In this document: positions 20,762 through 60,786 of the stretch, piece after piece
Numbering within the stretch: position 1 is the first letter of the stretch
How the letters are laid out: each line of letters begins with the position of its first letter
Source: Selaginella moellendorffii
Taxonomy: Eukaryota; Plantae; Lycopodiophyta
Length of the DNA stretch: 64,000 nt
Assembly: GCF_000143415.4 (NCBI RefSeq)
Contig: NW_003314266.1
Span: 518,463 to 582,462, forward strand
Direction: 5' to 3'
Translations under genes and position numbers: made by a program
Notes under the pieces: generated by a model
The model's input: only the letters and a program-made list of their open reading frames with translations
What the model was told of the DNA's origin: nothing
Databases searched by the model: none

Positions 20762-21046
20762 CGCCAAAGAAGGATCACGATCACGTAAGAACACACTCGA
20801 GCAGCGATCGATCGACCAACCTGGTTGGAGCGGCCGTTTGGCGAAGAGCTCCCAATGCTTCCATCCATGGATGAAACGCTAGCTTCCATCTCTCATCGCT
20901 CCTCCCTCATGCTTGAAAGGAAGATGGGTTTCCAATTGTGGAAGACCAACGGCTTTAAAAGCGAAGACCGCATTTAAATCGCTACTCCTACTATTTGGTA
21001 AGCAAATTAAAGCCAGTTTACCACTAATTCACGCACCAACCGTCCG

Positions 21047-21075
21047 GGTCAACTCTAAAGTCAACAATTTTGACT
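21047..21075. promoter_or_regulatory. Three W-box cores (TTGACY) within 29 bp
   Basis: ggtcaa 21047, agtcaa 21059, ttgact 21070; retained in unit 2 (~35834-35863). Confidence 0.45.
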
Positions 21076-21178
21076 TTTAAACATTGTCTGTTGATGCGTA
21101 GAATATTCTTATATTATATTGTTGGTCAAATAACGCTTAGACAACGAGGTACTTCTTTTGAGTTCTATTGGATGGTAT

Positions 21179-21900
21179 ATCGTAGCAAAGCAAAGGAAGA
21201 AATAAAACCTTGGGCAGTCTTTCGTTCCCTAAGATTCCTGGTGAGTTTCATAGGGCCGTGCGATCTCAGTCACGAAGTTCCAGTATTGGATATATCCATC
21301 TTGGAGACCATCGATTCAAGAAAGAGCTTTCCAAGCCCTCGGGGAAAGCTGGGGATTCTTCCTGTTGCTAGGACATGGAATTCGGATGAGGTCGGTTTTG
21401 CGACCAGCTTCGAGGCGTCCAAGAGGCAGCCAGGGGCAGCCTCGCAGGTCCACACCTCACCTTGCGATCCAAGCAAGCTTCCGGCAAATCTGGCGCGCGA
21501 CAGAGACGTCTCCACGAGTTATGGAGCGGAGGTCACCGCTCTGTCCAGGCGGCTGCTGGAGCTCTTCTCGGAATCGCTGGGACTTGGAGCGAGTGAGCTA
21601 GTTCACATGAGGCTGAATCACTGTCCTCCCTGCCCGGAACCATAGGAATGAAGCCTCACTCGGACATAAACGCCTTCGCGATCTTGGGAGGGCCTCCAAT
21701 TTCTCTCTTTTGTTTGGATTCTATTGATTGAGTTTTCTTCTCGATCGATCACGCGTTAGATCTCTCCAATGGCGAGGAGTGGTCAATCCCGAAAGAGATC
21801 GAGTTTCCATCGTTTGCTTCTATAGTCCCGGTCTGGGTGCTCGCATTGGGCCCGTAGCTTGATGCCCTTTGTACGGAGAACATACCAAAAGCCTTCAAGC
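21179..21900 (+). pseudogene. 2OG-Fe(II) dioxygenase pseudogene (deleted copy)
   Basis: Collinear with 22189-23255 but start codon lost (TTG) and many deletions and frameshifts. Confidence 0.9.
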
Positions 21901-22188
21901 GGGAATTTGGTTTAATAAAGAAGAAATGATAATATTTTTGTTTGCTTGTTTATTATTTGAATAGATAAAGAAGCTGATGGCAAGCTTTTCAACTCTAAAG
22001 TCAACAAATCTGTCTTTCTAGCGCATTTATCTGTTTGCGCATAGGATTTTTGGAAATTAAAACATTGCCTACTATTAGATGCGTGTCAAATCTAAGGAGT
22101 GACCAATACATGTCTTGGTCATTTGATCGCGAGGCATTCTCCTTAAGTTCGCGTTCTTTTAGATCGTAGCAAAGGGGAAAAAAGAATC

Positions 22189-23255
22189 ATGGGCAGTCTT
22201 TCGTTCTTCAAGATTCCTGGTGAGTTTCACAGGGCTCCGGATCCACACCCATGGAAAGATCTCGATCACGAAGTTCCAGTGGTGGACATATCCAGCTTGG
22301 AGGATACCGACTCAAGGGAGGGAGCACTCCAAGCTCTCCGGGACGCCTGTGAGAGCTGGGGATTCTTCCAGTTGCTAGGACATGGAATTCCCCGCGAGCT
22401 CAGCGACAAGATGATGGAGGTGGCCTACAAGTTCTTCGATCTTCCCGCCCAAGACAAGCTCGTCTACTGCTCGGACAATGTCTTGGACGATGTCGGTTTT
22501 GCGACCAACTTCGAGGTGTCCAAGAGTCGGCGGCCAAGCGCAACCTGGCAGGAGTTTTTCTTCCAGATGTGCTCCCCACCTTGCGATCCAAGCAAGCTTC
22601 CAGAAAATCCCGCGCGCTACCTAAACGTCTCCACGAGTTATGGAGCGGAGGTCACCGCTCTGGCCAGGCGGCTGCTGGAGCTCTTCTCGGAATCTCTGGG
22701 GCTTGAAGCGAGCGAGCTCGCCGGGAGATTCGAAGGCGAGCTCATGTCCATGAGGCTGAATCACTATCCTCCCTGCCCGGAGCCACAGCTCACCATTGGA
22801 ATCCAGCCTCACTCGGACATAAACGCCTTCACGATCTTGCAGCAGGACGTAGAGGGCCTTCAAGTCCTTCACGATGGAGCGTGGGTGACTCTCAAGCCTT
22901 TGCCCGGAGCTCTCGTGGTCAACGTTGGAGACCAGCTCCAGGTATGCTCTTTCTTTCTTAGATTCTCTACATTGAGTGAGTTTCTTCTCGATTGATCGCA
23001 TGCTAGATTCTCTCCAACGATAAGTTCAAGAGCGTGGAGCATCGAGGAGTGGTCAATGGCGAAAGAGCTCGAGTCTCCATCGCCTGCTTCTATAGCCCCG
23101 GTCTGGGTGCTCGCATTGGGCCCATCCCGGGGCTTGTCAACGAGGAATGCCCCGCGAAATACAAAGAAAGTTTGTATGGAGAATATGCCAAAGCCTCTCT
23201 TAGCATGGAGCTCAATAGGAAGAGCGCTCTGTCCACTCTCAAAGTTGACGTATGA
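22189..23255 (+). CDS. 2-oxoglutarate/Fe(II) dioxygenase (DOXC), exons 22189-22941 and 23007-23255
   Basis: VPVVDIS, ACESWGFFQLLGHGI, RLNHYPPCPEP, HSD..H iron triad (PHSD, VEHR), RVS 2OG-binding motif. Confidence 0.95.
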
Positions 23256-23482
23256 AAAGGTAATTTTGTTTTCGAACAAAAAGAGAATCTTAAGCTTTAG
23301 AAAAAGCAAATCCAAAGGTTTAATAAGACCATCATTCTCAATACATAACACTTCTGTAATGTTTGAGATAAATGGTGCCTCAGGGGAGATCATAGTAGTC
23401 GCCTGTACCACACAAGCACCAGCTTGCAAGAACTTTCATCATGTTTTGTCACAAAAAGAGATTATTTTGAGAGGTTTACTCC

Positions 23483-23758
23483 ATGCTTGTTCTTGCCTCT
23501 GTGGTGCTTGCTATGATCCAATGCCAGGCCGCCGCACCACAACGCAACCATGTAACGCTCAACACCACTCCGTTTCTTGGCACTGCCTCCACGTTCTTCT
23601 GCCCGTGCCACCGCTTCTACTGTTACAGCTCTTCGTTATTTCATCTCCCTGGAACAATGCCGCTTGCTCTTGCCACACTTCACTGGGATTGCAGGACCAA
23701 AAGCCCGAGCTGCCAAGCACTCTTTTCAACCTCTGGAATAAACACTGGTGATCAGTAG
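23483..23758 (+). pseudogene. Possible decayed small secreted Cys-containing peptide gene
   Basis: Signal-like MLVLASVVLAMIQCQA; unit 2 copy (38110-38367) has different indels and frame. Confidence 0.3.
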
Positions 23759-23887
23759 TAGCAAGGTGCCTTGTTTCAGAGCGCAGAGATCTGGAAACGT
23801 AGTACTTTCCATTAGTTTGAGCATGCGGGAGTTCTCTAACCAAGAAACGTGTTTATGCTTACTTGCGAAGGCACAGAGGAGCACAGA

Positions 23888-25680
23888 CTACGAGCCTCTT
23901 CTGGGGCAGCGATAGCACTTTGCGAACAGTCCAAACTCGTGAGCTTGGTTCCTTAGCACGCTGATGCTCGCCCACGTTGCAAAGCCACCGGCCATGATTG
24001 CCATCCAAAGGATGGCTCCCAAGTTCATGCAGTGGAGGCTTAACCAGCTCATGCCAAACGGAGGCTGCTCGATTGCATTCTAAACAGCAGTGAGGTTAGA
24101 TTAGTCTTGAGAACCGTGGCAGAGGTTTCATGCAGTACCTTTTGAGATTTGGAAGTCCAATAGACGAGCACGGACGCAGCACAGGGAATGACGTATAGCC
24201 AGGTCATAAAAATGGACCCAGCCGCCGAGCTCAAAGTTCCATAAAACGGGAACATAATAGCCACCAACAAGGATGCCATAAAGACTGGAGTTCTGACCAA
24301 CGTTTTCTTCCAGTAGCTTGGAGACTGATGAACTTTAAACCACTTCTCTACAATAATATATAGAGGCTGTGACAAAATCCCATACTGGATGAGCTGCTCA
24401 GCACGGCCGTCAATAGTATAGATAGAGAACCGCGTGTTTTGGGTTGAATACCTGGTGTAGGAGCATAAGAACCACTGCCGCATCACGAAATTTTGTGCGT
24501 GGGAGCATAGAGAAGACATTGTACTGCACGTTGTCTCCGAAAGCCCAGTAGACGCTTATAATCGAAAACAGCACCACAGGTGTCATGAACAAGTCCGAAT
24601 AGAGAGAAGTCAGCTTATATTTTGAAGGTTGCCACATCGCATCCATTAGCTCCCTGCAAAGTAAAGATTCAAAGTCGAGTCTAGAACTTGAGTAAAAGCT
24701 TACACTGGGATCGCATGAGCTCCAAATATGATAGTGCTAGCAAACCCGTTAAAGTAGCTCCTGATGCTGTGAGGTGCTGTGTGCCTCAGGTCGTCATCCT
24801 GCACGAAGCTTGGCTCAGAACCGCTCGAAACACACAATATATACCTGGTGAATTGCCAAAGAAGCAAATGCCATATACAAAGCAGTGTAAACGATCATCA
24901 CAAGACCGGCGAAAGACCACATTCTATAGTTCCGAAGGGAGGGAATGAAGACAGTGGTTGCAAAGCATGAACCGAGGACTAAAGTCCAAGTTCTTCGTTC
25001 TAACTTGTCATTGATGTAGTATACGATGCTGCAAACATTCGAATTTGAATGATTTGGAACACCGAATTCATCACTTACTTTCCAACAGCAACCATTTGAA
25101 TAGCTGCAAAGCTGAACATGATTCCAAAGTTAAATATCAGTGTGATTGTTTCCCAGCGGCGTCCTAAAAGACCGCCAAGAACCTCGTGCATCTGCTAGAC
25201 GTAAAGACGTAAAAAACACCAGTTTCTTCGTGAAAAGCCACTCACTCCACCTGTATAGTGTGGCGCTTGAAAGAGTGGGGGTCGTCTTTCAGCCTATTAT
25301 GACGATACTGCAGGTACAAGGTGTTCATCATCCAAGCGCTCCAGCAGCCTACAGTAGACTGAATCAAGATAGCAAGTATGCCAGAAACAAATCCCATTTG
25401 CGACATTGCAAAAGGTAGCGATACTAGCAGTTGCGATATCTGTTAACAGATACCAGAAATTCCAGTGGAAGTAAGAAAAACAAAACCATACCTTGGTTGT
25501 CGACATGTTCAGCCAGGCATCAAAGGTAGAACCCCCATCGCAAAAGACCGTCGAAAAGAAACGCGAAATCGTGGGAGTAGAACCGAAGGAGATGTAAATG
25601 CCAGACGCACTAGCGTCAGACGAAACATGAAGATGATTTGCTTCTCCAGTCTCTGCATCGGCATCATCGTAGGAGGACAT
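23888..25680 (-). CDS. Highly diverged AUX1/LAX-family (AAAP) transporter, copy 1
   Basis: Spliced product collinear with AUX1/LAX: DGGSTFDAW, SLPFAMSQMG, FKRHTIQ/MHEVLGGLLG, YYINDKLERRTWT, TTVFIPSLRNYRMWSF, GAHAIPV/ELMDAMWQP, VYWAFGD, RDAAVVLMLLHQ, NAIEQPP, FGLFAKCYRC; stop at 23888. Confidence 0.9.
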
Positions 25681-26093
25681 CCTTAGATCTTGCGGCAGGG
25701 AAATCTAAAGTTTTTGTGCATACCATATTCTAAAGTCAAAAATTGTTGTCAATGTTTGATGGCGTCTGACGTTATAAGTATGTTCTAGCGATGATTTCTT
25801 CCGCCATCCAAGCAGCTTCTCATAAAGCTGCGCCACTAAGGTATGACGGAATGAGATCATCAGCACCTGGGCGTTATTTACAAAACATATTAAAACAATT
25901 ACGTCGTACTACGTATTTACGTCCGGTCAAGCTGCTTCCAGAACACGTAACGTTCAAGTCGGTCAAGTCGAGGAACTTTACCAATTGAATCTGTGCCAAG
26001 GTCCTACAGTGAAAGCAATATCAGTCAATCTCCTCAATCGTCACTCCGGCACTCACCTAAAGAAGCCGAGGAGCCCTGAGCGCACCGAGCAGC
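25681..26093. promoter_or_regulatory. Putative bidirectional promoter between AUX1/LAX-like and OMT genes
   Basis: 413 bp between divergent ATGs; ACGT cluster at about 25900-25955 and ggtcaa W-box cores at 25925 and 25961. Confidence 0.6.
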
Positions 26094-27258
26094 ATGGAAG
26101 ACGAAAGTTGGATGAAGCTCATATTGATCAACCAGGGACACTTCATCTCCTCGTCCCTCAAGGCCTTGGTGAAGCTCAAGGTACCTGACATCCTCAACAA
26201 AGCCGCACCCTCCTTGCTCTCCCCAGTAGAGATCTGCGACCAGCTGCCGCTGCGCAGCAAAGCCACTCTAGATTCTTCCGCATCTCAGCTGGGTCGACTT
26301 ATGCGTGCTCTGGCCATGTTTGGTGTCTTCCAAGAGTGCCCCTCGTCAGAGGGAGAACAGAGGTATGGCCTCAACGCCGTCTCCAAGCACCTAGTCACAG
26401 AAGGCAATAGCGAGTCAATGGTACCATCGATGATGTTTTTCCCGAAGCAGTATAATGTATGGGACTTGTTACCTGACGCTATACTCGAAGGTGTACAGCC
26501 AGGCTCCAAAGCTCATGGTGGAAAGTCGGTGTTCGAGCTGGACCCAGCCATCGTCAAGGTGTTCAACACCGTCATGTCAGCTTACACGAGACGTACCATG
26601 CGGCTCGCTCTGCAAGTTTACGACGGCTTCCAGCATGCGGAGGTGATTGTGGATGTCGGTGGCAGCTTGGGAGCGTCTCTAGAAATCATCCTTGCCAAGT
26701 ACCCGAACGTCAAAGGGATTAACTTCGATCTCCCAGCGGTCGTGGAACACGCTGCAAAAGTACAAGGTTCGTCACAAATTTGTATGTGTCTTGGAATGCA
26801 CTTACTATCTAATCTTCAGGTATGGAAAACGTCGGAGGAGACATGTTCGTCTCCGTTCCTCAAGGAGACCTCATGTTGCTGAAGGTAAAAAGATGTCTAC
26901 GGCCAAGATGGAAAATCTAAGAGCTAGACTTTGGCATTTACTTTTGCAGTGGGTTCTACACGACTGGAATGACGAAAAAGCTATCAAGATCCTTGAAAAC
27001 TGCCGCCAATCACTTGCAGAGGGGGGCAAGGTGGTGGTAATTGATGCACTTCTGCCGGAGGTGGCTGAAAAAAGCGAGGAATACAGCCTGGCTGACAAGA
27101 ATGCAGTTTTGTATGATCTAGCTATGCTAACAACAGGAGAAGCAGCAAAGGAGAGAACTTACAAGGAGTTGGAGCAAGTTGCGATGGCTGCCGGCTTCTC
27201 CAGCTTATCAGTCAGAGCTAGAGTCGACTCTGCCTCCATTATCGAGATCTATCCTTAA
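26094..27258 (+). CDS. SAM-dependent O-methyltransferase (COMT-like, class II), 3 exons, copy 1
   Basis: N-terminal dimerisation domain (LGRLMRALA, YGLNAVSK), VDVGGSLG, GINFDLP, GGDMF, KWVLHDW catalytic His, KERTYKE; introns ~26767-26819 and ~26885-26949. Confidence 0.95.
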
Positions 27259-27301
27259 AAATTCCAGACAATCAGTGCAATCGAGATATTTGTGAAACGC
27301 A

Positions 27302-28660
27302 TTACCTGCTTGATGCTGTTGCTGGTTGCTGTTCGCGAGAAATCACGTCGTCCTCTGTATCGTCACTGGTTCCATCACTAAAGTCGTTACTGTCGCTCAC
27401 TTCTGCCGGATGATCACTTTCATAAGTTGTGTCCTCCAGTTCTTCATCGTTAACGGCCTTGGAAAGATCCGGCTCAGCCTCAGGCGAGGAATCTGGAGTA
27501 CAAAGACTGCTCCGGCTTCTTCTTCGCGGATCTGTTAGAGGTAGCAAGCTCCGCTTAAGTGGTCTCTTCTTCCTCGAAACAAGCGCCAGTTCCACGTACT
27601 TCCGACGCAAATCAATGTACGGGGACATCTCAATCTTGTAGTCCCAGTGGTAAGCTTCCCTCAAGAACACGAAGTAATAGTTGTTGAGCCGTTCCATGGC
27701 GAAGAACAGCGACTCCCTCCGTAAAAACTTGGCCAAGTCCTCTGGAAGCTGGAGCTCGTCTTTGAGAATCGCTAGATCTCTCACATTCGCTCGCTTCAGC
27801 AACGTCAAGCTTAGAAACTCGTGACAAACCGCGAGAGACCGCTTCCGCGCCTCTGGCGAGCCATCAGGATCGTCAACTTTACCACCACGCTCGTATGGAG
27901 AATCAAACCGGCGCTTCTGGAAGGACAAGAGCTTCAGGTATCTGTCCCTTTCCATCTCGCAGTTGTTCTCGAAAGCTACTCGAAAGCTGTGAACATTTCC
28001 CTCGCAAAACTTGTCCTTGCGGCTCGGGTCTATATGTTTTACCCCCCGGAGCTCTCGAGCCGTGACCGCTAGCGCTGGATCCCAAGCCCCCAGCTCCAGC
28101 ATCGCGTCGTCCTTTTGGTTCCTGGTGATCGTGAAAAAATCCGGGAACCTGACCAGGGTGGTGGTCTCGAAATCCTCGGAGAAGCCAAAGCACGGCTTGA
28201 GAATGCTAAGCTTCTTCACTGGAATCCTCCCTTCCTTGGCCATCATCAAGAGCTTCCTCAAGACCTGGACAGCATACGGCTCGTGCTGCTTTAGAACTTC
28301 CTCCTCCCTCTTCATGAGGTGCTTCATCGTCTCGGTCAGCTCCACAATCTTACGGGACTCCTTGTCACACATCTCAAACATGAGCCGGAATTTCCTCAGA
28401 AAGAAGTCGGAGTCCCTGTTGCGAAATCCCAGCTTCTTGGCGATCTTTTGAAACCGCGCCTTTGAGACGAGCTCCTTGGCAGCCACGGCCCCGGCCACAC
28501 GATGGATGAGCCGCATTTCCTTCTCGCGCACGGCGAGCTTGGCGTAGGTCATCGCGTCCTGGCCGCCGCTGAATCCGCCCATAGATCGCTTGCTCGAGAC
28601 CATACATCCTGTAAGAATGCGAATCCCTGTGGCGGATCCCAGTACCTGGCGTTGCCGCAT
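27302..28660 (-). CDS. PORR (plant organelle RNA recognition) domain protein
   Basis: LRKLLMMA, LGAWDPALAVT, FQKRRFDSPYE, ARKRSLAVCHEFLSLTL, VFLREAY; intronless. Confidence 0.88.
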   Translation of the reverse strand: MRQRQVLGSATGIRILTGCMVSSKRSMGGFSGGQDAMTYAKLAVREKEMRLIHRVAGAVAAKELVSKARFQKIAKKLGFRNRDSDFFLRKFRLMFEMCDKESRKIVELTETMKHLMKREEEVLKQHEPYAVQVLRKLLMMAKEGRIPVKKLSILKPCFGFSEDFETTTLVRFPDFFTITRNQKDDAMLELGAWDPALAVTARELRGVKHIDPSRKDKFCEGNVHSFRVAFENNCEMERDRYLKLLSFQKRRFDSPYERGGKVDDPDGSPEARKRSLAVCHEFLSLTLLKRANVRDLAILKDELQLPEDLAKFLRRESLFFAMERLNNYYFVFLREAYHWDYKIEMSPYIDLRRKYVELALVSRKKRPLKRSLLPLTDPRRRSRSSLCTPDSSPEAEPDLSKAVNDEELEDTTYESDHPAEVSDSNDFSDGTSDDTEDDVISREQQPATASSR

Positions 28661-28757
28661 CGCGCTTGTAAAGCCCTAAACCTTTCTTCCCGGAAGAACC
28701 CTAAAAAGAATAGCTTTTTAACAGTGAATCATCTAATCTAACATAGATAAGACAATA

Positions 28758-29152
28758 TTATTGTCCTCGTATATCTAAGGTGGTCCTCGAGCAATTTGCA
28801 CACTGCTTGCAGAGGTCGCACTTATCCTTGCCCAGGTCCTCTCGCAAACTGCGCATGTCCTCACCCAGTTCCTGGTGCAGTTTGTGCAGCTCCTCACTCA
28901 GTTTTTTGTGCAGGTCCTCGAGCAAATCCTCGCCCAATTTGCGCAGGGCCTCCAGCAACATCTCGCCCAAGTCCACAGTCTCGCTACAAATCAAAAGTCA
29001 ACCAAAGATGAGGAACAAACAAACTTACGTGATGGGTGGATTTCATTCACACCCTTTAACTTGCAGCCGTCTTCGAACACTCTGCAGTGCTGTGTCATGG
29101 GACACCAAGATGTTAACAGTAGTAGTGCTATCATTAAAAGTATTTGATTCAT
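28758..29152 (-). pseudogene. Frameshifted copy of the small coiled-coil gene at 43340-43735
   Basis: One base shorter (ggg vs gggg at ~29034) before the intron, so exon 2 is out of frame. Confidence 0.4.
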
Positions 29153-29159
29153 GTTAGTC

Positions 29160-35075: not shown

Positions 35076-35727
35076 ATGGCTCTTGGATGTTCTTCTCGAT
35101 CCATGGTCTCACTCCTGGCATTGCTTTGCATAGCTCTTCTGCCATGGACTTCTCTCTCCGTCGGGACGCTGAACACTCTGGGACCGATGTGGAGCAAGTC
35201 GGACAATCCCAGCTGGAACGGTCGGGCCCCCTACACGAATTCCTTCGCGCTGTGTGTGCTCGAGTCGGGAACTCTCCTGCCATCGTCTCAGGTACGTTTC
35301 CAACGCAAAACAACACAGATGCTCCGAGCACTCCCATGTTTGCTCTGAGCTCTGGTGGCTACTTCACGTGCGCGCTTAGCTACGAGAGCAAGAAGCCATT
35401 TTGCTGGGGGAATCCCAACTCGACGGTTCCATCGGTTTACAGGGATGTGAGCTACAGCAGCTTGAGCGCTGGACAGGGTCACGTCTGCGCTCTAAGAAGC
35501 AGTGGAAAACTCGACTGCTGGGGACAAAACACGTATGGGCAGCTAAACTTTCCGCAAGCTCGCAGCTTTATCCAAGTGAGCTCTGGATATGACTACACCT
35601 GCGGGCTCGTCGAGGGTGGCGAGGCTCTTGGGATCGTTCCACCGCTGTTTTCTCCCGCGCACAGCCGAAATCGCCTTTAGTGTTTTGTGAACGCACACTT
35701 GCGGACTGGAAAAGGACACTGGGACTG
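35076..35727 (+). pseudogene. 5' fragment of the CRINKLY4-like kinase cut by the duplication breakpoint
   Basis: Nearly identical to 45986-46658, with a frameshift near 35287, and ends at the unit junction. Confidence 0.9.
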
Positions 35728-35937
35728 TGGACGACCAACGGCTTTAAAAGCGAAGACCGGCATTTAAATCGCTACTCCTATTTGGTAAGCAAATTAAAGC
35801 TAATTTACTACTAATTCACGCACCAACCGTCCGGGTCAACTCTAAAGTCAACAATGTTGACTTTTAAAACATTGTCTGTTGATGCGTAAAATATTCTTAT
35901 TATATTGTTGTACACTTCTTTTAAGTTCTATTCGATG

Positions 35938-36650
35938 TCGTAGCAAAGCAAAGGAAGAAATAAAACCTTGGGCAGTCTTTCATTCCCTAAGATTCCTGGT
36001 GAGTTTCATAGGGCCGTACGATCTCAAGCACGAAGTTCCAGTAATGGATATATCCAACTTGGAGACCATCGATTCAAGAGAAAGAGCTCTCCAAGCCCTC
36101 GGGGGAAGCTGGGGATTCTTCCTGTTGCTAGGACATGGAATTCGGACGAGGTCGGTTTTGCGACCAGCTTGGGGCAGCCTGGCAGACGTGACCTTGCGAT
36201 CCAAGCAAGCTTTCCGCAAATCTGGCGCGCTACCGAGTTATGAAGCGGAGATTATCGTTATGTCCAGGCGGCTGCTGGAGCTCTTCTCGGAATCGCTGGG
36301 ACTTGGAGCGAGCGAGCTCGTTAACATGAGGCTGAATCACTGTCCTCCCTGCAACTCACCCTAGGAATCACGGACATAAACACCTTCGCAATCTTGGAAG
36401 GACATCCAATTTCTTCACGATGGAGCGAGGGTGACTACCAGGCCTTCGGCCGGAGCTCTTGTGGTCAACATTGGAGACCAGCTCCGGTATGCTCTCAGAT
36501 GCTTGCTCTTTAGTTTGGATTGAGTTTTCTTCTCGATCGCTAGATTCTCTCTAATGATAAGTTCAAGAGCGTGGACCATCGGTCAATCCCAAAAGAGCTC
36601 GAGTTTCGATCGTAATGCCCTTTGTATGGAGAATATACCAAAACCTCCAA
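35938..36650 (+). pseudogene. 2OG-Fe(II) dioxygenase pseudogene (unit 2)
   Basis: Counterpart of 21179-21900 with further deletions. Confidence 0.9.
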
Positions 36651-36848
36651 ATATCTTTGGCGGGAATTTTGTGTAATAAAGAAAAAATGAGTAATATCTT
36701 GTCTCGATTTGTGGGTGTCATTTTTGCGGAGGGGCCATGCTAAAAGCAAATGCTTCCATACACGCATCTCGTCTATAGGTCAATTCTAAATCTGACTTTT
36801 CAGCGCATCTAAAGCGTGATTTATCGTAGCAAAGGGGAAAAAAGAATC

Positions 36849-37932
36849 ATGGGCAGTCTTTCGTTCTTCAAGATTCCTGGGGAGTTTCACAGGGCTCCGG
36901 ATCCACACCCATGGAAAGATCTCGATCACGAAGTTCCAGTGGTGGACATATCCAACTTGGAGGAGACCGACTCAAGGGAGAGAGCACTCCAAGCTCTCCG
37001 GGACGCCTGTGAGAGCTGGGGATTCTTCCAGTTGCTAGGACATGGAATTCCCCGCGAGCTCAGCGACGAGATGATGGAGGTGGCCTACAAGTTCTTCGAT
37101 CTTCCAGCCCAAGACAAGCTCGTCTACTACTCGGACAATGTCTTGGACGAGGTCGGTTTTGCGACCAGCTTCGAGCCTCCGAAGTTCGAGGTGTCCAAGA
37201 GTCGGCGGCCAAGCGCAACCTGGAAGGAGTTTTTCTTCCAGATGTGCTCCCCACCTTGCGATCCAAGCAATCTTCCAGAAAATCCCGCGCGCTACCGAAA
37301 CGTCTCCACGAGTTATGGAGCGGAGATCACCGCTCTGGCCAGGCGGCTGCTGGAGCTCTTCTCGGAATCTCTGGGACTTGAAGCGAGCGAGCTCGCCGGG
37401 AGATTCGAAGGCGAGCTCATGTCCATGAGGCTGAATCACTATCCTCCCTGCCCGGAGCCACAGCTCACCATTGGAATCCAGCCTCACTCGGACATAAACG
37501 CCTTCACGATCTTGCAGCAGGACGTAGAGGGCCTTCAAGTTCTTCACGATGGAGCGTGGGTGACTCTCAAGCCTTTACCCGGAGCTCTCGTGGTCAACAT
37601 TGGAGACCAGCTCCAGGTATGCTCTTGCTTTCTTAGATTCTTTACATTGAGTGAGTTTTTCTTCTCGATTGATCGCGTGCTAGATTCTCTCCAACGATAA
37701 GTTCAAGAGCGTGGAGCATCGAGGAGTGGTCAATGCCGAAAGAGCTCGAGTCTCTATCGTCTGCTTCTACAGCCCCGGTCTGGGTGCTCGCATTAGGCCC
37801 ATCCCGGAGCTTGTCAACGAGGAATGCCCCGCGAAATACACCGAAAGTTTGTATGGAGAATACGCCAAAGCCTCTCTTAGCATGGAGCTCAATAGGAAGA
37901 GCGCTCTGTCCACTCTCAAAGTTGACGTATGA
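36849..37932 (+). CDS. 2-oxoglutarate/Fe(II) dioxygenase, copy 2 (exons 36849-37616, 37684-37932)
   Basis: Same intact motifs as copy 1; 5-aa longer loop (SFEPPKFEVS). Confidence 0.95.
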
Positions 37933-38487
37933 AAAGATAATTTTGTTTTCGAACAAAAAGAGAATCTTAAGCTTTAGAAAAAGTAAATTCAAAGATGATC
38001 ATTCTCAATACATAACACTTCTGTAATGTTTGAAATAAATGGATAGTAGTCGTCTAAGAACTTTCATCATATTTTGCCACAAAAGAGATCATTTTGAGAG
38101 TTTTACTCCATGCTCGTTCTTGCCTCTGTGGTGCTTGCAGCTTCTTCTATGATCCAATGCCAGGCCGCCGCACCAGAACGCAACCATGTAACACCACTGC
38201 GTTTCTTGACACTGCCTCCACGTTTTCTGCCCGTGCCACCGGTTAGCTCTTCTCGTTGTTTCATCTCCCTGGAACAGGGTTGCAACTATGCCGCTTGCTC
38301 TTGCCACAGTTCACTTAAAGCCCGCGAAGCTCGAGCTGCCAAGCACTCTTTTCAACCTCTGGAATAAACACTAGTAGCAAATTGTTTCAGAGCGCAGAGA
38401 TCTGGAAACGTAATCCTTTCCATTAGTTTGAGCATCTGACCAAGAAACGTGTTTATGCTTACTTGCGAAGGCACAGAGGAGCACAGA

Positions 38488-40276
38488 CTACGAGCCTCTT
38501 CTGGGGCAGCGATAGCACTTTGCGAACAGTCCAAACTCGTGAGCTTGGTTCCTTAGCACGCTGATGCTCGCCCACGTTGCAAAGCCACCGGCCATGATTG
38601 CCATCCAAAGGATGGCTCCCAAGTTCATGCAGTGGAGACTTAACCAGCTCGTGCCAAACGGAGGCTGCTCGATTGCATTCTAAACAGCAGTGAGGTTAGA
38701 TTAATCTTTAGAACCGTGCCAGAGGTTTCATGCGGTACCTTTTGAGATTTGGAAGTCCAGAAGACGAGCACGGACGCAGCACAGGGAATGACGTATAGCC
38801 AGGTCATAAAGATGGACCCAGCCGCCGAGCTTAAAGTTCCATAAAACGGGAACATAATAGCCACCAACAAGGATCCCAAAAAGACCGGAGTTCTGACCAA
38901 CGTTTTCTTCCAGTAGCTTGAAGACTGATGGATTTTAAACCACTTCTCTACAATAATATATAGAGGCTGTGAGCAAATCCCATACTGGATGAGCTGCTCA
39001 GCACGGCCGTCAATAGTATAGATAGAGAACCGCGTGTGAATACCTGATGTAGGAGCATAAGAACCACTGCCGCATCACGAAATTTTGTGCGTGGGAGCAT
39101 AGAGAAGACATTGTACTGCACGTTGTCTCCGAAAGCCCAGTAGACGCTTATAATCGAAAACAGCACCACAGGTGTCATGAACAAGTCCGAATAGAGAGAA
39201 GTCAGCTTGTATTTTGAAGGTTGCCACATCGCATCCATTAGCTCTCTGCAAAGTAAAGATTCAAAGTCGAGTCTAGAACTTGAGTAAATGCTTACACTGG
39301 GATCGCATGAGCTCCAAATATGATAGTGCTAGCAAACCCGTTAAAGTAGCTCCTGATGCTGTGTGGTGCCGTGTGCCTCACGTCGTTATCCTGCACGAAG
39401 CTCAGAACCGCTTGAAACACACAATATATACCTGGTGAATCGCCAAAGAAGCAAATGCCATATACAAAGCAGTGCAAACGATCATCACAAGACCGGCGAA
39501 AGACCACATTCTATAGTTCCGAAGGGAGGGAATGAAGACAGTCGTTGCAAAGCATGAACCGAGGACTAAAGTCCAAGTTCTTCGTTCTAACTTGTCATTG
39601 ATGTAGTATACTACGCTGCAAACATTCGAATTTCAACGATTTGGAACACCGAATTCATCACTTACTTTCCAACAGCAACCATTTGAATAGCTGCAAAGCT
39701 GAACATGATTCCAAAGCTAAATATCAGTGTGATTGTTTCCCAGCGGCGTCCTAAAAGACCGCCAAGAACCTCGTGCATCTGCTAGACGTAAAGAATGTAA
39801 AGACGTAAAGAACACGAGTTTCTTCGTGAAAAGCCACTCACTCCACCTGTATAGTGTGGCGCTTGAAAGAGTGGGGGTTGTCTTTCAGCGTATTATGACG
39901 ATACTGCAGGTATAAGGTGTTCATCATCCAAGAGCTCCAGCAGCCTACAGTAGACTGAATCAAGATAGCAAGTATGCCAGAAACGAATCCCATTTGCGAC
40001 ATTGCAAAAGGTAGCGACAGCAGCAATTGCGATATCTGTTAACAAAGACCAGAAATTCCAGTGGAAGAAAAACAAAAACCATACCTTGGTTGTCGACATG
40101 TTCAACCAGGCATCAACGGTAGAACCCCCATCGCAAAAGACCGTCGAAAAGAAACGCGAAATCGTGGGAGTAGAACCAAACGAGATGTGAATGCCAGACG
40201 CACTAGCGCCAGACGAAACATGAAGAACATAATTCGCTTCTCCAGTCTCTGCATCGGCATCATCGTAGGAGGACAT
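38488..40276 (-). CDS. Diverged AUX1/LAX-family transporter, copy 2
   Basis: Exons appear in frame; frame-changing indels fall in introns (one intron reduced to 41 nt). Confidence 0.82.
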
Positions 40277-40682
40277 CCTTAGATCTTGCGGCAGGGAAAT
40301 CTAAAGGTTTGTGTGCATACCATATTATGAGGTCAAATATTCTTGTCGATGTCTGATCGCATCTTACGTTATAAGCATGTTCTAGCGATGATTTCTTCCG
40401 CCTTCTCATCAAGCTGCGCCACTAAGACATGACGGAATGTGATCATCACTTCCAAGCCTGTGGGAGTTATTTACAAAACATACTAAAACTATTACGTACG
40501 TACTACGTATTTACGCCCGGTCAAGCTGGGTGGGTCCATAACACGTAACGTTCAAGTCGGTCAAGTAGAGGAACTTTACCAATTGAATCTGTGCCAAGGT
40601 CCTACAGTGAAAGCAATATCGGTCAATCTCCTCAATCGTCACTCCGGCACTCACCTAAAGAACTCGAAGAGCCCTGAGCGGC

Positions 40683-41844
40683 ATGGAAGACGAAAGTTGG
40701 ATGAAGCTCATATTGATCAACCAGGGATACTTCATCTCCTCGTCCCTCAAGGCCTTGGTGAAGCTCAAGGTACCTGACATCCTCAACAAAGCCGCACCCT
40801 CGCTCTCCCCAGTAGAGATCTGCGACCAGCTGCCGCTCCGCAGCAAAGCCACTCTAGATTCTTCCGCATCTCAGCTGGGTCGACTTATGCGTGCTCTGGC
40901 CATGTTTGGTGTCTTCCAAGAGTGCCCCTCGTCAGAGGGAGAACAGAGGTATGGCCTCAACGCCGTCTCCAAGCACCTAGTCACAGAAGGCAATAGCGAA
41001 TCAATGGTACCATCGATGATGTTTTTCCCGAAGCAGTATAATGTATGGGACTTGTTACCTGACGCTATACTCGAAGGTGTACAGCCAGGCTCCAAAGCTC
41101 ATGGTGGAAAGTCGGTGTTCGAGCTGGACCCAGCCATCGTCAAGGTGTTCAACACCGTCATGTCAGCTTACACGAGACGGACCATGCGGCTCGCTCTGCA
41201 AGTTTACGACGGCTTCCAGCATGCGGAGGTGATTGTGGATGTCGGTGGCAGCTTGGGAGCGTCTCTAGAAATCATCCTTGCCAAGTACCCGAACGTCAAA
41301 GGGATTAACTTCGATCTCCCAGCGGTCGTGGAACACGCTGCAAAAGTACAAGGTTCGTCACAAATTTGTATGTGTCTTGAAATGCACTTACTATCTAATC
41401 TTCAGGTATGGAAAACGTCGGAGGAGACATGTTCGTCTCCGTTCCTCAAGGAGACCTCATGTTGCTGAAGGTAAAAAGATGTCTACGGCCAAGATGGAAA
41501 ATCTAAGAGCTAGACTTTGGCATTTACTTTTGCAGTGGGTTCTACACGACTGGAATGACGAAAAAGCTATCAAGATCCTTGAAAACTGCCGCCAATCACT
41601 TGCAGAGGGAGGCAAGGTGGTGGTAATTGATGCACTTCTGCCGGAGGTTGCTGAAAAAAGCGACGAATATAGCCTGGCTGACAAGAATGCAGTTTTGTAT
41701 GATCTAGCTATGCTAACAACAGGAGAAGCAGCAAAGGAGAGAACTTACAAGGAGTTGGAGCAAGTTGCGATGGCTGCCGGCTTCTCCAGCTTATCAGTCA
41801 GAGCTAGAGTCGACTCTGCCTCCATTATCGAGATCTATCCTTAA
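40683..41844 (+). CDS. O-methyltransferase, copy 2
   Basis: Almost identical to copy 1 (one codon shorter, one E>D change). Confidence 0.95.
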
Positions 41845-41887
41845 AAATTCCAGACAATCAGTGCAATCCAGATATTTGTGAAACGCA

Positions 41888-43242
41888 TTACCTGCTTGAT
41901 GCTGTTGCTGGTTGCTGTTCGCGAGAAATCACGTCGTCCTCTGTATCGTCACTGGTTCCATCACTAAAGTCGTTACTGTCGCTCACTTCTGTTGGATGAT
42001 CACTTTCATAAGTTGTGTCCTCCAGTTCTTCATCGTTAACGGCCTTGGAAAGATCCGGCTCAGCCTCAGGCGAGGAATCTGGAGTACAAAGACTGCTCCG
42101 GCTTCTTCTTCGCGGATCTGTTAGAGGTAGCAAGCTCCGCTTAAGTGGTCTCTTCTTCCTTGAAACAAGCGCCAGTTCCACGTACTTCCGACGCAAATCA
42201 ATGTACGGGGACATCTCAATCTTGTAGTCCCAGTGGTAAGCTTCCCTCAAGAACACGAAGTAATAGTTGTTGAGCCGTTCCATGGCGAAGAACAGCGATT
42301 CCCTCCGCAAAAAACTTGGCCAAGTCCTCTGGAAGCTGGAGCTCGTCTTTGAGAATCGCTAGATCTCTCACATTCGCTCGCTTCAGCAACGTCAAGCTTA
42401 GAAACTCGTGACACACCGCGAGAGACCGCTTCCGTGCCTCTGGCGAGCCATCCGGATCGTCAACTTTAACACCACGCTCGTATGGAGAATCAAACCGGCG
42501 CTTCTGGAAGGACAAGAGCTTCAAGTATCTGTCCCTTTCCATCTCGCAGTTGTTCTTGAAAGCTACTCGAAAGCTGTGAGCATTTCCCTCGCAAAACTTG
42601 TCCTTGCGGCTCGGGTCAATATGTTTTACCCCCCGGAGCTCTCGAGCCGTGACCGCTAGCGCTGGATCCCAAGCCCCCAGCTCCAGCATCGCGTCGTCCT
42701 TTTGGTTCCTGGTGATCGTGAAAAAATCCGGGAACCTGACCAGGGTGGTGGTCTCGAAATCCTCGGAGAAGCCAAAGCACGGCTTGAGAATGTTAAGCTT
42801 CTTCACTGGAATCCTCCCTTCCTTGGCCATCATCAAGAGCTTCCTCAAGACCTGGATAGCATACGGCTCGTGCTGCTTTAGAACTTCCTCCTCCCTCTTC
42901 ATGAGGTGCTTCATCGTCTCGGTCAGCTCCACAATCTTACGGGACTTTTTGTCACACATCTCAAACATGAGCCGGAATTTCCTCAGAAAGAAGTCGGAGT
43001 CCCTGTTGCGAAATCCCAGCTTCTTGGCGACCTTTTGGAACCTTTGAGACGAGCTCCGTGGCAGCCACGGCCCCGGCCACACGATGGATGAGCCGCATTT
43101 CCTTCTCGCGCACGGCGAGCTTGGCGTAGGTCATCGCGTCCTGGCCGCCGCTGAATCCGCCCATAGATCGCTTGCTCCAGACCATACATCCTGTAAGAAT
43201 GCGAATCCCTGTGGCGGATCCCAGTACCTGGCGTTGCCGCAT
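41888..43242 (-). pseudogene. PORR gene copy with two frameshifts
   Basis: 5-nt deletion near 43040 and +1 A near 42310 relative to copy 1. Confidence 0.9.
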
Positions 43243-43339
43243 CGCCCTTGTAAAGCCCTAAACCGTTCTTCCCGCCAATGGGAAGAACCCTAAAAAGAAG
43301 GAACTTAACAGTGAATCATCTAACATAGACAAGACAATA

Positions 43340-43735
43340 TTATTGTCCTCGTATATCTAAGGTGGTTCTCGAGCAATTTGCACACTGCTTGCAGAGGTCG
43401 CACTTATCCTTGCACAGCTCCTCGCGCAAACTGCGCATGTCCTCACCCAGTTCCTGGCGCAGTTTGTGCAGCTCCTCACTCAGTTTTTTGTGCAAGTCCT
43501 CGAGCAAATCCTCGCCCAATTTGCGCAGGGCCTCCAGCAACATCTCGCCCAAGTCCACAGTCTCGCTACAAATCAAAAGTCAAACAAAGATGAGGAACAA
43601 ACAAACTTACGTGATGGGGTGGATTTCATTCACACCCCTTAACTTGCAGTCGTCTTCGAACACTCTGCAGTGCTGTGTCACGGGACACCAAGATGTTAAC
43701 AGTAGTAGTGCTGTCATTAAAAGTATTTGATTCAT
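43340..43735 (-). CDS. Hypothetical 116-aa protein, hydrophobic N-terminus plus ~11-residue helical repeats (exons 43735-43611, 43565-43340)
   Basis: 45-nt GTAAG..TAG intron joins MNQILLMTALLLLTSW.. in frame to ETVDLGEMLLEALRKLGED..; no homology recognised. Confidence 0.4.
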
Positions 43736-43799
43736 GTTAGTTTTTGCCGAAGAAACCCAGTAGATCCAAGAGCCTTTAATCTTAGCCGTCTACGGGTGG

Positions 43800-45770
43800 T
43801 GATATGAGACTGTTCAAACGATTGCTTTGGAAAGCCCAGAAGTTTAGCTATTACGCTGAGATCACCCTGGTCAGCGCATGGAAGATTTTCTTGCTCTCCT
43901 GGAGCAAGTCGGACAATCCGAACTCGGACGGCCGGGCTCCATACAGGAATTCCTTCGCGCTGTGCTTGCTCGAGGCGGGAACACTCATGCCATCGTGCTC
44001 AGGAACTTTTCCAACGCAAAACAACACAGATGCTCCAAGCACTCCCATGTTTGTTCTGAGCTCCGGTGGCTACTTCACTTTCGGACTTAGCTACGAGAGC
44101 AAAAACCACGATGCTGGGGGAATTCCACGATGGCCGTTCCATCGGTTTACAGGAATGTCAGCTATAGCAGCTTGAGTGCCGGACAGGATCACGTCTGTCC
44201 GCTGAGAAGCAGTGGAAAGCTAGACTGCTGGGGATCAAACGTGGATGGGGAGCTAGACGTACCGAAAAATCGCAGCTTTGTCATGGTGAGCTCTGGCTAT
44301 GGCTACACTTGCGGGCTCATCAAGACTGGTGAAGCGTTTTGCTGGGGGTGAGATGCTCCATCCCGTTCACTGGCCAGTGGTATCACCTTTGGTGCTTTGT
44401 TCTCCGGAGGAACACACGCTTGCGGTAAAGAACAGTAGCGCTCCGGTTTGTTGGGGATATAACGACCACGGACAGGAGGTCCAGGGCCGGTTGACGACCC
44501 AAGCATTTTATTCGCTAGCTTTGAGACTGTTCCACTCATGCGGAATAGTGAAGGACACAGGGAACGTAGTCTGCTGGGGTGACAATGCTTTCAACCAGAC
44601 GGATGGCCCGAAAGGCGAGACCTTTTCAGTCATTTCAGCTGGAGACTACTACACTTGTGGTGTGAGCTTGAAAGATCCAGAGAAGCAAGCAGCAGTACCA
44701 GCTTGTGCAAGCTGGCTCGAAGAGGTGTCCGGTTGCTGGCGATCGAGTGTGTCTCGAGTGTTTACGAGGCAACAAGCGGTGCACGGGAACCGAGCCAACG
44801 AAATTGCATCAAGGAACTTAGCAGTGGGATTTTCCATGGGAGGAATCTTCATTCTTGGTGCTGCTGCTTTTACAGCGGGGTATTTTCTTCGGCGACGACA
44901 CAAGCGTCCATTTCAATGTGGCTGTTTACCTTGGCGAGGGAAACCATCCACATCGGAGGAATGGGAGATTCTAGCAAACAGGCTGGTGACTTTCAGTAGC
45001 TCGGAGATCATCCACGAAGGCTACCACTCAGACATGATCGTCGAGAAAGGTGCCCGCAGAGTGGTGTATAAGCCTGTTCTTCCGGATGGACGAGCGCTGG
45101 CTTTGAAGAAATCCCGTGCCGATGACAAGTCTTTGATGAAGGAGCTGTCCCTGCTAGCCAGATTACACCACACTTATCTCGTGAACTTGGTGGGATACTG
45201 CGGCTCGCTCTTCGACTGCCTTTTCAAGAAGCCAGAGATCAGGCTGGATTGAATTCGCATCGCAGCACAGGCAGCTCGAGGACTGGAGTCCTTACACAAG
45301 TATGCGTCTCCAGAAATACTCCATCGAGATGTGAAAGCAGCAAACATACTCTTGGATGGGGACTGGAACGCTTGTCCGACTTTGGCTTCTCCCTCTCGAC
45401 GTCGGGGAGTAGCACCCGGTTCATGACAATGGTCGGAACACCTGGCTACATGGACCCGGAGAGCAAACCATCAAGTTCACCACCAGGAGCGACGTCTACA
45501 GCTTTGGAGTGGTGCTGCAGGAGCTCCTCACAGGTCGACAAGCGATTCAAAGCTCGGAGAAGCTCCGCAGAGCTGGAAGAGGTGCTCGAGCTGGCCCTCC
45601 AGTGCACAGGCTTTGATGGCGATCTTCCTCCCAGTATAAGCGGTGTTGCGAACACTCTGGAGCGTGTGTTGAGCACAGTGGTGAGACGTCCAGAGGAGAA
45701 TTTCAGTGCCTCGAGCAGTACTACTACGAATGTTTTTACTAGCAGCAGCTGCTCGAAAGAACTCTGAAGT
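43800..45770 (+). pseudogene. CRINKLY4-like kinase pseudogene (paralog B, unit 2)
   Basis: Counterpart of 32480-34790 with a different set of lesions. Confidence 0.9.
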
Positions 45771-56305: not shown

Positions 56306-56399
56306 ATTGCTACATAACAGTATCTTTCTTTGTTTTTTAAAAAACCCTAGCCCTAATTGACTGACGGAAACTGCTATGACACGTCGGATTTGCGTTAGC

Positions 56400-60750: not shown

Positions 60751-60786
60751 ACTATCTACAGGAAAGCGAATATTATTTTAGGGCTC

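What the first reader, a model, noticed from the sequence alone, without database searches (positions are those of the whole stretch)
22189..27258. Candidate biosynthetic module: 2OG dioxygenase + repurposed AUX1/LAX-type transporter + O-methyltransferase, kept intact in two tandem copies
Seen: three unrelated gene families within 5 kb, the transporter and OMT head-to-head, and all three open in both units while neighbouring PORR and kinase copies decay. Three P450s lie 12-22 kb downstream of unit 2. Known: 2OGD hydroxylation followed by O-methylation is a standard tailoring pair in plant clusters, and a linked F5H-COMT pair is a Selaginella precedent. Inference: a possibly undescribed cluster that makes and moves a hydroxylated, methoxylated aromatic or indolic compound. 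The substrate cannot be read from sequence.
Basis: partly seen in the sequence, partly recalled or inferred. Interest (0 to 1): 0.85.

Follow-up and report, generated by a model that had tools for sequence, protein, structure and literature searches.

The report
Duplicated dioxygenase–odd auxin-carrier–methyltransferase gene trio
In the spikemoss Selaginella moellendorffii, a dioxygenase, a strongly altered relative of the auxin-uptake carrier and a methyltransferase lie side by side in two tandem copies; all are intact and transcribed, but nothing yet shows they act in one pathway, and the altered carrier is the unusual part.

Summary
Window 22189-27258 holds an intact 2OG dioxygenase (333 aa), an AUX1/LAX-like permease (472 aa, 8 exons, minus strand) and a COMT-type O-methyltransferase (348 aa). 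Unit 2 repeats all three intact at 36849-41844 (94% DNA identity).

- **Expression:** spliced RNA contigs from four studies confirm every predicted intron, so all three families are transcribed.
- **Selection:** coding DNA has 3 in-frame indels against 24 in the non-coding DNA (p=4e-10), so both copies are under purifying selection. PORR and RCC1-kinase copies decay.
- **Copy number:** the other haplotype (GL377566.1) carries one unit, and the duplicated block also carries unrelated genes.
- **Transporter:** it is 41% identical to canonical AUX1/LAX, and 6 of 9 IAA-contact residues are changed while His249 is kept. It belongs to a Selaginella-only clade. Other members sit beside microbial-type terpene synthases and aldo-keto reductases at two other loci, and are co-duplicated with them.

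The biosynthetic-cluster reading is not shown. Co-expression and substrate could not be tested, and in this gene-dense genome adjacency alone is weak evidence. I put about 0.3 on one pathway and about 0.5 on independent neighbours.

First readers of this scan flagged divergent AUX1/LAX paralogues elsewhere in this genome (s1-349016, s1-418745, s1-346956).

The parts
22163..29158 (.). Tandem unit 1 (2OGD, AUX1/LAX-like, OMT, PORR)
   Evidence: Self-BLAST gives 94.06% identity over 7070 columns to 36823-43741.
22189..23255 (+). 2OG/Fe(II) dioxygenase, unit 1. Exons 22189-22941 and 23007-23255, 333 aa. Motifs H208-x-D210, H263 and R273-x-S275.
   Evidence: Pfam DIOX_N and 2OG-FeII_Oxy. The 65-nt intron is confirmed by contigs in 4 runs. 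Motifs. This allele has 11 non-synonymous and 3 synonymous changes of its own.
23888..25680 (-). Divergent AUX1/LAX-like permease, unit 1. Exons 25680-25492, 25439-25251, 25191-25079, 25028-24845, 24798-24704, 24653-24452, 24393-24139 and 24079-23888. 472 aa.
   Evidence: Pfam Aa_trans. All 7 introns are confirmed. The public model P0080 (414 aa, 98% identical) matches AUX1 and LAX3 structures end to end at E about 1e-110. Pocket residues.
25653..25723 (-). Intron of a 5' leader isoform that removes the ATG at 25680. Further minus-strand leader introns lie at 26003-26055 and 26389-26470, so this transcript runs antisense over OMT exon 1.
   Evidence: Joints (CT..AC on the plus strand). Splice sites and the ATG are conserved in unit 1, unit 2 and the other haplotype.
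26094..27258 (+). COMT-type O-methyltransferase, unit 1. Exons 26094-26766, 26820-26884 and 26950-27258, 348 aa. SAM motif VDVGGSLG at 186-193, with H250, D278 and E314.
   Evidence: Pfam Dimerisation and Methyltransf_2. 98% identical over exon 1 (224 aa) to SELMODRAFT_227279, which has the same length of 348 aa. Both introns confirmed. Motifs.
27302..28660 (-). PORR-domain gene, unit 1, with an open 452-aa ORF
   Evidence: Pfam PORR, E 6e-82.
36823..43741 (.). Tandem unit 2
36849..37932 (+). 2OGD, unit 2. Exons 36849-37616 and 37684-37932, 338 aa, with a 15-nt in-frame insertion.
   Evidence: Lift-over and translation. Contigs in 3 of 4 runs carry this allele's diagnostic bases and the 15-nt insertion.
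38488..40276 (-). AUX1/LAX-like permease, unit 2. 8 exons, 473 aa.
   Evidence: All splice sites are GT-AG.
40683..41844 (+). OMT, unit 2. 347 aa.
41888..43082 (-). PORR pseudogene, unit 2, broken by a +1 and a -5 frameshift
   Evidence: Indel list and split ORFs.
20937..21853 (+). Decayed 2OGD copy upstream of unit 1. Its twin lies at 35726-36700.
   Evidence: 73-83% identity to each other and to the 2OGDs. No Pfam hit on its longest ORF.
35727..45825 (.). Segment absent from the other haplotype (GL377566.1). It holds the 2OGD pseudogene, unit 2 and an RCC1 fragment, and is bounded by 0.83-kb repeats at 34909-35727 and 45826-46658.
54134..63330 (+). Three CYP71-clan P450 genes (54134-55659, 58567-60094, 61750-63330) interleaved with PPR genes
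   Evidence: Pfam. Best solved relatives are CYP76AH, isoflavone synthase and C4H.

Best explanation
The locus is a gene-dense, duplication-prone stretch of the Selaginella moellendorffii genome. A block of about 10-14 kb was duplicated in tandem. Each copy carries a decayed 2OGD copy, the 2OGD, the AUX1/LAX-like permease, the OMT, PORR and RCC1-kinase pieces.

The duplication is older than the split of the two haplotypes. It was later reshaped by gene conversion in the OMT-PORR part. Unit 2 was then lost from the other haplotype, most likely by unequal crossing-over at RCC1-kinase repeats (inferred).

Selection has kept both copies of the three small-molecule genes open while the PORR and kinase copies decay (shown).

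Each gene most likely works on its own terms (inferred from motifs and homology):
- The 2OGD is an Fe(II)/2-oxoglutarate oxidase of a lycophyte-specific DOXC lineage. It would hydroxylate, desaturate or O-demethylate a small molecule.
- The OMT is a SAM-dependent, COMT-family methyltransferase with the H/D/E catalytic set.
- The permease is an H+-coupled LeuT-fold carrier. It keeps His249 but has a rebuilt pocket, so it probably no longer carries IAA.

That the three serve one pathway is not shown. I treat them as neighbours that were co-duplicated, with the one-pathway reading as a live rival.
For: - **Duplication:** structure. The block also contains PORR, RCC1-kinase and 2OGD pseudogene copies.
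- **One unit in the other haplotype:** GL377566.1 reads RLK, DUF1635, 2OGD, Aa_trans, OMT, PORR, RCC1, RCC1-kinase, raffinose synthase.
- **Age and conversion:** that haplotype is orthologous to unit 1 (97-99%). Units 1 and 2 differ by 4-10% outside the OMT-PORR part, where they are 99.2-99.5% identical.
- **Selection:** 3 in-frame indels in 3465 coding nt against 24 indels in 1495 non-coding nt, Fisher p=4e-10. dN/dS is 0.08 for the OMT, 0.25 for the permease and 0.59 for the 2OGD.
- **Transcription:** all predicted introns are confirmed in 4 runs.
- **Gene density:** about 20 genes lie in 64 kb, so adjacency is cheap.
- **Neighbours:** PPR, kinase, P450 and 2OGD families are all locally amplified here, as expected of a duplication-prone region.
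Against: - The permease is flanked on both sides by tailoring-type enzymes, and its transcripts overlap both neighbours.
- Its paralogues lie beside, and are co-duplicated with, other enzyme genes at two of three further loci examined.
- Exactly the three small-molecule genes survived in both units while PORR and the kinase did not.
All three points are what a true module would also predict.
Confidence: 0.5

Rival explanations
1. It is a true metabolic module, a small biosynthetic gene cluster. The 2OGD oxidises and the OMT methylates one lineage-specific phenolic compound, for example a phenylpropanoid or flavonoid. The rebuilt AUX1/LAX-derived carrier moves the substrate or product across a membrane by proton symport. 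Tandem duplication doubled the module.
For: - The three genes lie directly next to each other, with overlapping transcripts.
- Both copies of all three are under purifying selection while PORR and the kinase decay.
- The unit-2 2OGD allele is transcribed.
- The permease pocket is remodelled: N58T, Q59K, A61S, Y244 lost, T325Q and A329L, with H249 kept.
- The Selaginella-only permease clade (100/99 support) lies beside microbial-type terpene synthases (L003/L004) and aldo-keto reductases (L002), with pairs co-duplicated.
- The SmF5H-SmCOMT pair shows that this species does cluster pathway genes.
Against: - There is no co-expression, substrate or product evidence.
- Only two enzyme families are involved.
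- Unit 2 is dispensable in one haplotype.
- One clade member (L005) has no enzyme neighbour.
- Fast-expanding families co-locate in duplication-prone regions anyway.
- The unit-1 2OGD looks relaxed and its allele is not seen in contigs.
- The assembled transporter transcripts splice out the upstream ATG.
Confidence: 0.3
2. It is an auxin-homeostasis module. The carrier imports IAA, the 2OGD oxidises it as DAO does, and the methyltransferase modifies an indolic product.
For: The carrier lies inside the land-plant AUX1/LAX clade and keeps Q62, Q153 and H249.
Against: - 6 of 9 IAA-contact residues are changed, including Q59. PMC12337342 calls Q59 invariant in the family.
- The 2OGD matches DAO only at E 2e-14, against 1e-40 for ANS, JOX and O-demethylases.
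- The OMT is COMT-type. From my own knowledge, IAA carboxyl methyltransferase belongs to the SABATH type.
Confidence: 0.04
3. The two-unit arrangement is an assembly artefact, for example two haplotypes stitched in tandem.
For: The public assembly contains both haplotypes, and the other scaffold shows one unit.
Against: - The units differ by 6%, far above the haplotype difference of 1.5-3.5% (and the 98.5% figure quoted).
- Unit 2 has its own diagnostic bases and a 15-nt insertion. These occur in RNA contigs (X2, X4, X12), the other haplotype's allele occurs in X1, and no laid contig shows unit 1's 2OGD allele.
- Three distinct alleles exist for each gene.
Confidence: 0.04

Closest known systems
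SmF5H-SmCOMT two-gene cluster of Selaginella moellendorffii (Weng et al. 2011, as cited in PMC8416159)
   Same: Same species. A COMT-family OMT lies next to an oxidising enzyme that would supply a hydroxyl to methylate.
   Different: Here the oxidase is a 2OGD, not a P450, and the nearest P450 is about 10 kb away. By eye, the OMT is roughly 40-45% identical to the closest solved COMT (9wam; not computed). I could not confirm which species 9wam comes from. A transporter lies between the two enzymes. No activity has been shown.
AUX1/LAX auxin influx carriers (AUX1 and LAX3 structures 9jdr and 9h61; PMC12337342, PMC12364708)
   Same: Aa_trans domain, end-to-end alignment at E about 1e-110, placement inside the land-plant AUX/LAX clade, and retention of His249, Q62, Q153 and the C-terminal FAKCYxC motif.
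   Different: Only 41% identical to canonical members, whereas Marchantia and Arabidopsis are 72% identical to each other. 6 of 9 IAA-contact residues are replaced, including the 'invariant' Q59. The gene belongs to a Selaginella-only, tandemly amplified clade.
Plant gene clusters with an embedded transporter, such as the sorghum dhurrin cluster with SbMATE2 and the opium-poppy alkaloid cluster with BUP purine-permease-type carriers (from my own knowledge, not checked here)
   Same: A transporter gene lies among tailoring enzymes and is co-inherited with them.
   Different: Those transporters are MATE or PUP families with shown substrates and co-expression. No AAAP or AUX1-type carrier is known in such a role, and nothing is shown here.
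2OGD plus OMT tailoring pairs in phenolic metabolism, such as coumarin and flavonol 6-hydroxylation followed by methylation (from my own knowledge)
   Same: The same two enzyme classes, in a chemically sensible order.
   Different: This 2OGD is at most 38% identical to any angiosperm protein found, 41% to a Diphasiastrum protein and 49% to its nearest Selaginella paralogue. Its best solved relatives include O-demethylases, so it could equally undo a methylation.

Membership tests
Plant 2OG/Fe(II) dioxygenase, DOXC class | DIOX_N and 2OG-FeII_Oxy domains | tested here: met
   Pfam E 1e-24 and 1e-20.
Plant 2OG/Fe(II) dioxygenase, DOXC class | HxD...H iron triad and RxS 2-oxoglutarate site | tested here: met
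   H208-S-D210, H263 and R273-V-S275 in unit 1, and the same in unit 2.
Dioxygenase for auxin oxidation (DAO) | Closest similarity to DAO among 2OGDs | tested here: not met
   DAO structure 6kun at E 2e-14, against ANS, JOX and O-demethylase at about 1e-40.
COMT-type (class II) plant O-methyltransferase | Dimerisation and Methyltransf_2 domains, and a SAM-binding glycine motif | tested here: met
   Pfam. VDVGGSLG at 186-193.
COMT-type (class II) plant O-methyltransferase | Catalytic His/Asp(Glu)/Glu set (the 'HDE' of 10.1101/2021.05.27.445924) | tested here: met
   H250 (LHDW), D278 (VVID) and E314 (KERT).
SmCOMT (syringyl-lignin OMT) | Lies adjacent to SmF5H | tested here: not met
   The neighbours here are the permease and PORR, and the nearest P450 is about 10 kb away.
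AUX1/LAX auxin influx carriers | Aa_trans permease that groups with land-plant AUX/LAX in a tree | tested here: met
   The land-plant clade has 100/100 support, with algal homologues outside it. E about 1e-110 to AUX1 and LAX3 chains.
AUX1/LAX auxin influx carriers | Conserved IAA-contact residues N58, Q59, A61, Q62, Q153, Y244, H249, T325 and A329 (PMC12337342) | tested here: not met
   Unit 1 of the window's protein reads T, K, S, Q, Q, gap/I, H, Q, L. All nine are invariant from Marchantia to angiosperms.
AUX1/LAX auxin influx carriers | IAA uptake activity | not testable with these tools
   Needs an uptake assay.
Plant biosynthetic gene cluster | Several non-homologous biosynthetic genes lying contiguously | tested here: inconclusive
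   There are two enzyme families plus a transporter within 5 kb, present twice. The P450s are 10-20 kb away behind unrelated genes.
Plant biosynthetic gene cluster | Co-expression of the member genes | tested here: inconclusive
   All three are present as spliced contigs in the same 4 runs, but contigs cannot give expression levels. The gene was not found in the stored part of the atlas supplement.
Plant biosynthetic gene cluster | Members act in one pathway | not testable with these tools
   Needs enzymology and metabolite analysis.
Plant biosynthetic gene cluster | Linkage conserved in related taxa | not tested
   No other Selaginella protein appeared in the searches. The other haplotype keeps the three genes linked in one unit.

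The most novel reading that the evidence does not exclude
Selaginella has turned the normally invariant AUX1/LAX auxin carrier into a lineage-specific family of specialised-metabolite permeases. These are genomically paired and co-duplicated with biosynthetic enzymes: 2OGD plus OMT here, microbial-type terpene synthases at one other locus and aldo-keto reductases at another. On this reading, this locus is one such synthesis-and-transport module.
Probability: 0.3. Interest if true: 0.8.

Novelty: new variant of a known kind. Interest (0 to 1): 0.5.

Why it matters
AUX1/LAX carriers are treated as a small, highly conserved auxin-import family. A recent structure paper calls Gln59 and His249 invariant (PMC12337342). 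This locus and its paralogues show a whole Selaginella clade that breaks those rules and is still expressed and under selection.

If these carriers move specialised metabolites, and do so together with the enzymes encoded beside them, they would be the first AAAP-type transporters in plant metabolic gene neighbourhoods. They would also give a direct handle on unknown lycophyte chemistry: express the neighbouring enzymes, then find what the carrier transports.

If the genes are only neighbours, the locus is still a clear worked example of tandem duplication, gene conversion, haplotype-specific loss and selective retention of duplicates.

Tried and rejected
**Readings rejected**
- Auxin-homeostasis reading: the 2OGD is far from DAO, the OMT is COMT-type, and the IAA pocket is largely replaced.
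- Identity with the SmF5H-SmCOMT locus: there is no adjacent P450. The OMT is, by eye, only roughly 40-45% identical to the closest solved COMT.
- Haplotype mis-assembly as the source of the two units: there are three distinct alleles, and unit-2-specific bases occur in RNA.

**Look-ups that led nowhere**
- Expression look-up in the atlas preprint 10.1101/744326: the stored supplement is cut and lacks the gene. The journal version is not held.
- Context look-ups for P0034, P0035, P0081, P0291 and P0292 returned 'not on record'.
- L006, a 2OGD fragment elsewhere, has only a kinase beside it and no module.
- In L002, two of the four Aa_trans genes are not of the AUX1-like clade.
- Literature searches found no description of the divergent Selaginella AUX1/LAX clade or of its pairing with enzymes.

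**Not attempted or not possible**
- Ranking expression from contig depth, because the tool warns against it.
- Handing the spliced full-length proteins to the search tools by reference. I used exon pieces and the public models P0001, P0034 and P0080 instead.

Full report
**Organism and locus.** The OMT exon matches SELMODRAFT_227279 of Selaginella moellendorffii at 98%. The window aligns at 96.5% to scaffold GL377566.1 of GCA_000143415.2. The window is therefore S. moellendorffii, most likely the second haplotype of the heterozygous sequenced clone.

**Observation.** Pfam assigns the three ORF groups to three families: a 2OG/Fe(II) dioxygenase, an Aa_trans permease and a COMT-type O-methyltransferase. 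I built gene models by hand from the sequence.
- The 2OGD has 2 exons and 333 aa.
- The permease has 8 exons and 472 aa, on the minus strand.
- The OMT has 3 exons and 348 aa, identical in length and structure to the public model P0001.
- All introns are GT-AG and 41-68 nt long.

Self-comparison shows unit 1 (22163-29158) and unit 2 (36823-43741) at 94% identity. After lift-over, all three genes are open in unit 2, and the only coding indels are of 15, 3 and 3 nt.

PORR is open in unit 1 and frameshifted twice in unit 2. RCC1-kinase copies are mostly fragments. Three CYP71-clan P450s lie 10-20 kb further on, interleaved with PPR genes.

**Expression.** I laid contigs of four runs from four studies on 22150-27300. 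The contigs skip exactly the predicted introns of all three genes. They are therefore RNA, and all three families are transcribed.

Diagnostic bases show which alleles are present.
- The 2OGD contig carries the unit-2 allele, with its 15-nt insertion, in three runs.
- It carries the other-haplotype allele in the fourth run.
- Unit-1-type contigs are seen for the OMT, and pieces with no differences from unit 1 for the permease. None is seen for the 2OGD.

The permease transcripts overlap both neighbours. Their 3' end overlaps the 2OGD 3' UTR. A spliced 5' leader, with minus-strand introns at 25653-25723, 26003-26055 and 26389-26470, runs antisense over OMT exon 1.

The first of these introns removes the ATG at 25680. 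This explains the 414-aa public model, which starts at Met59. Even so, the ATG, the reading frame and the GGSxFDAW motif are conserved in all three alleles and in the paralogue P0287. I take the 472-aa protein as the functional product and leave the start site open.

Contigs cannot give expression levels, so co-expression is untested.

**Selection.**
- Between units, dN/dS is 0.08 (OMT), 0.25 (permease) and 0.59 (2OGD).
- Coding DNA has 3 indels, all multiples of three, in 3465 nt. Non-coding DNA of the same stretch has 24 in 1495 nt, of which 20 are not multiples of three (Fisher p=4e-10).
- Both copies have therefore been kept by selection.
- Lineage-specific counts add one caveat. The unit-1 2OGD has 11 non-synonymous and 3 synonymous changes of its own, which is about neutral.

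**History.** GL377566.1 has a single unit in the same context: RLK, DUF1635, 2OGD, permease, OMT, PORR, RCC1, RCC1-kinase, raffinose synthase. Window 35727-45825 is missing there and is bounded by 0.83-kb repeats.

That haplotype is orthologous to unit 1 (97-99%). Units 1 and 2 differ by 4-10%, except in the OMT-PORR part, where they are 99.2-99.5% identical. This points to gene conversion.

So the duplication predates the haplotype split. Unit 2 was later lost from one haplotype, or collapsed in its assembly. It is dispensable at least in the heterozygous state.

**The transporter.** P0080, the public model of the other haplotype's copy, is only 41-47% identical to every AUX1/LAX protein found. 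That includes Selaginella's own LAX-like P0239.

In a maximum-likelihood tree the window's proteins fall in a Selaginella-only clade (100/99 support) with a long stem. The clade lies inside the land-plant AUX/LAX clade (100/100 support).

I used the IAA-contact residues of the AUX1 structure (PMC12337342). Canonical proteins from Marchantia to angiosperms keep all nine. The window's protein changes six (N58T, Q59K, A61S, Y244 lost, T325Q, A329L) and keeps Q62, Q153 and His249. This fits a proton-coupled carrier with a new substrate.

**Other loci of the clade.**

| Locus | Position | What lies beside the AUX1-like gene |
|---|---|---|
| L003/L004 | GL377567.1, 2.82-2.85 Mb | AUX1-like genes alternate with two Terpene_syn_C_2 (microbial-type) terpene synthases. 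The pair is tandemly co-duplicated at 83-88% identity. |
| L002 | GL377567.1, 4.27-4.30 Mb | Two AUX1-like genes lie among aldo-keto reductases and other AAAP genes, again with local duplication. |
| L005 | GL377603.1 | Only a myosin, an F-box gene and retroelement remains. |

Three of the four loci examined therefore pair the carrier with enzyme genes. First readers of this scan flagged the same family elsewhere. I tested only the terpene-synthase pairing myself.

**Enzymes.**
- The 2OGD has the HxD...H and RxS motifs.
- Its nearest relatives are a Selaginella paralogue (49%) and a Diphasiastrum protein (41%). All angiosperm hits are at or below 38%.
- Its best solved relatives are an O-demethylase, ANS, a JOX and T6ODM. 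DAO is distant.
- Literature places 26 of the 74 S. moellendorffii 2OGDs in species-specific groups (Kawai 2014, as quoted in PMC8839085).
- The OMT has the SAM motif and the H/D/E residues. Its best solved relative is a COMT (9wam, 250 bits), ahead of angiosperm COMTs.

**Weighing.** Adjacency alone is weak evidence. The window holds about one gene per 3 kb, and several families are locally amplified. The duplicated block includes unrelated genes, and one haplotype lacks unit 2.

Three points favour a module:
- the permease has enzymes on both flanks;
- exactly these three genes are retained in both units;
- the permease clade is repeatedly paired with enzyme genes.

Fast-expanding families also co-locate in duplication-prone regions, which can explain the pairing without shared function.

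| Reading | Probability |
|---|---|
| Independent, individually functional neighbours | about 0.5 |
| One pathway | about 0.3 |
| Auxin-homeostasis module | about 0.04 |
| Assembly artefact | about 0.04 |

**Novelty.** The enzymes are new members of known families. The carrier is a new variant of the AUX1/LAX kind. I found no description of this clade, or of its pairing with enzymes, in the searchable literature.

**Limits.** Spliced proteins could not be passed by reference, so I searched with exon pieces and public models. Only one reads call was allowed, and it returned contigs.

Noticed in passing
window 25653-26470 (minus strand): The permease has a spliced 5' leader that starts inside or beyond OMT exon 1 and runs antisense to it. 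One leader intron removes the conserved ATG at 25680, leaving Met59 as the first in-frame start. This matches the 414-aa public model.
   Followed up: partly
window 23582-23729: The 3' UTRs of the convergent 2OGD and permease transcripts overlap by at least 150 nt. The permease 3' UTR also has an intron at about 23791-23862.
   Followed up: no
window 29158-32420: A 3.2-kb stretch is present only after unit 1 and is absent from unit 2 and from the other haplotype. It holds an ORF at 30486-30929 (minus strand) that matches Pfam MU117 (E 1e-17).
   Followed up: partly
window 26250-28650 and 40840-43240: The OMT-PORR part of units 1 and 2 is 99.2-99.5% identical. The two units are closer to each other here than either is to the other haplotype, which indicates recent gene conversion.
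   Followed up: yes
window 51764-63330: PPR genes and CYP71-clan P450 genes alternate in a tandem array with units 87-92% identical. I did not check this.
   Followed up: no
L003:12087-23585 and L004: A divergent AUX1-like gene and a microbial-type terpene synthase form a unit of about 6.8 kb that is tandemly duplicated at 83-88% identity.
   Followed up: partly
L002:1-25887: A mixed array holds two AUX1-like genes, two other AAAP genes, two aldo-keto reductases and a Helitron-like ORF, with direct and inverted local duplications. One AUX1-like gene has a gap of about 4.3 kb in its coding region.
   Followed up: partly
window 20937-21853 and 35726-36700: An older, decayed 2OGD copy precedes each unit. 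The real repeat therefore starts upstream of the reported units, and the 2OGD was duplicated before the block was.
   Followed up: partly
alignment (P0239, P0169, P0173, P0246): The less divergent lycophyte LAX-like proteins (Selaginella P0239 and the Diphasiastrum proteins) also depart from canonical pocket residues. N58 becomes V or F and T325 becomes E in all four, and A329 becomes L in three and T in P0246. No fully canonical lycophyte AUX1 turned up in the word-limited search.
   Followed up: no
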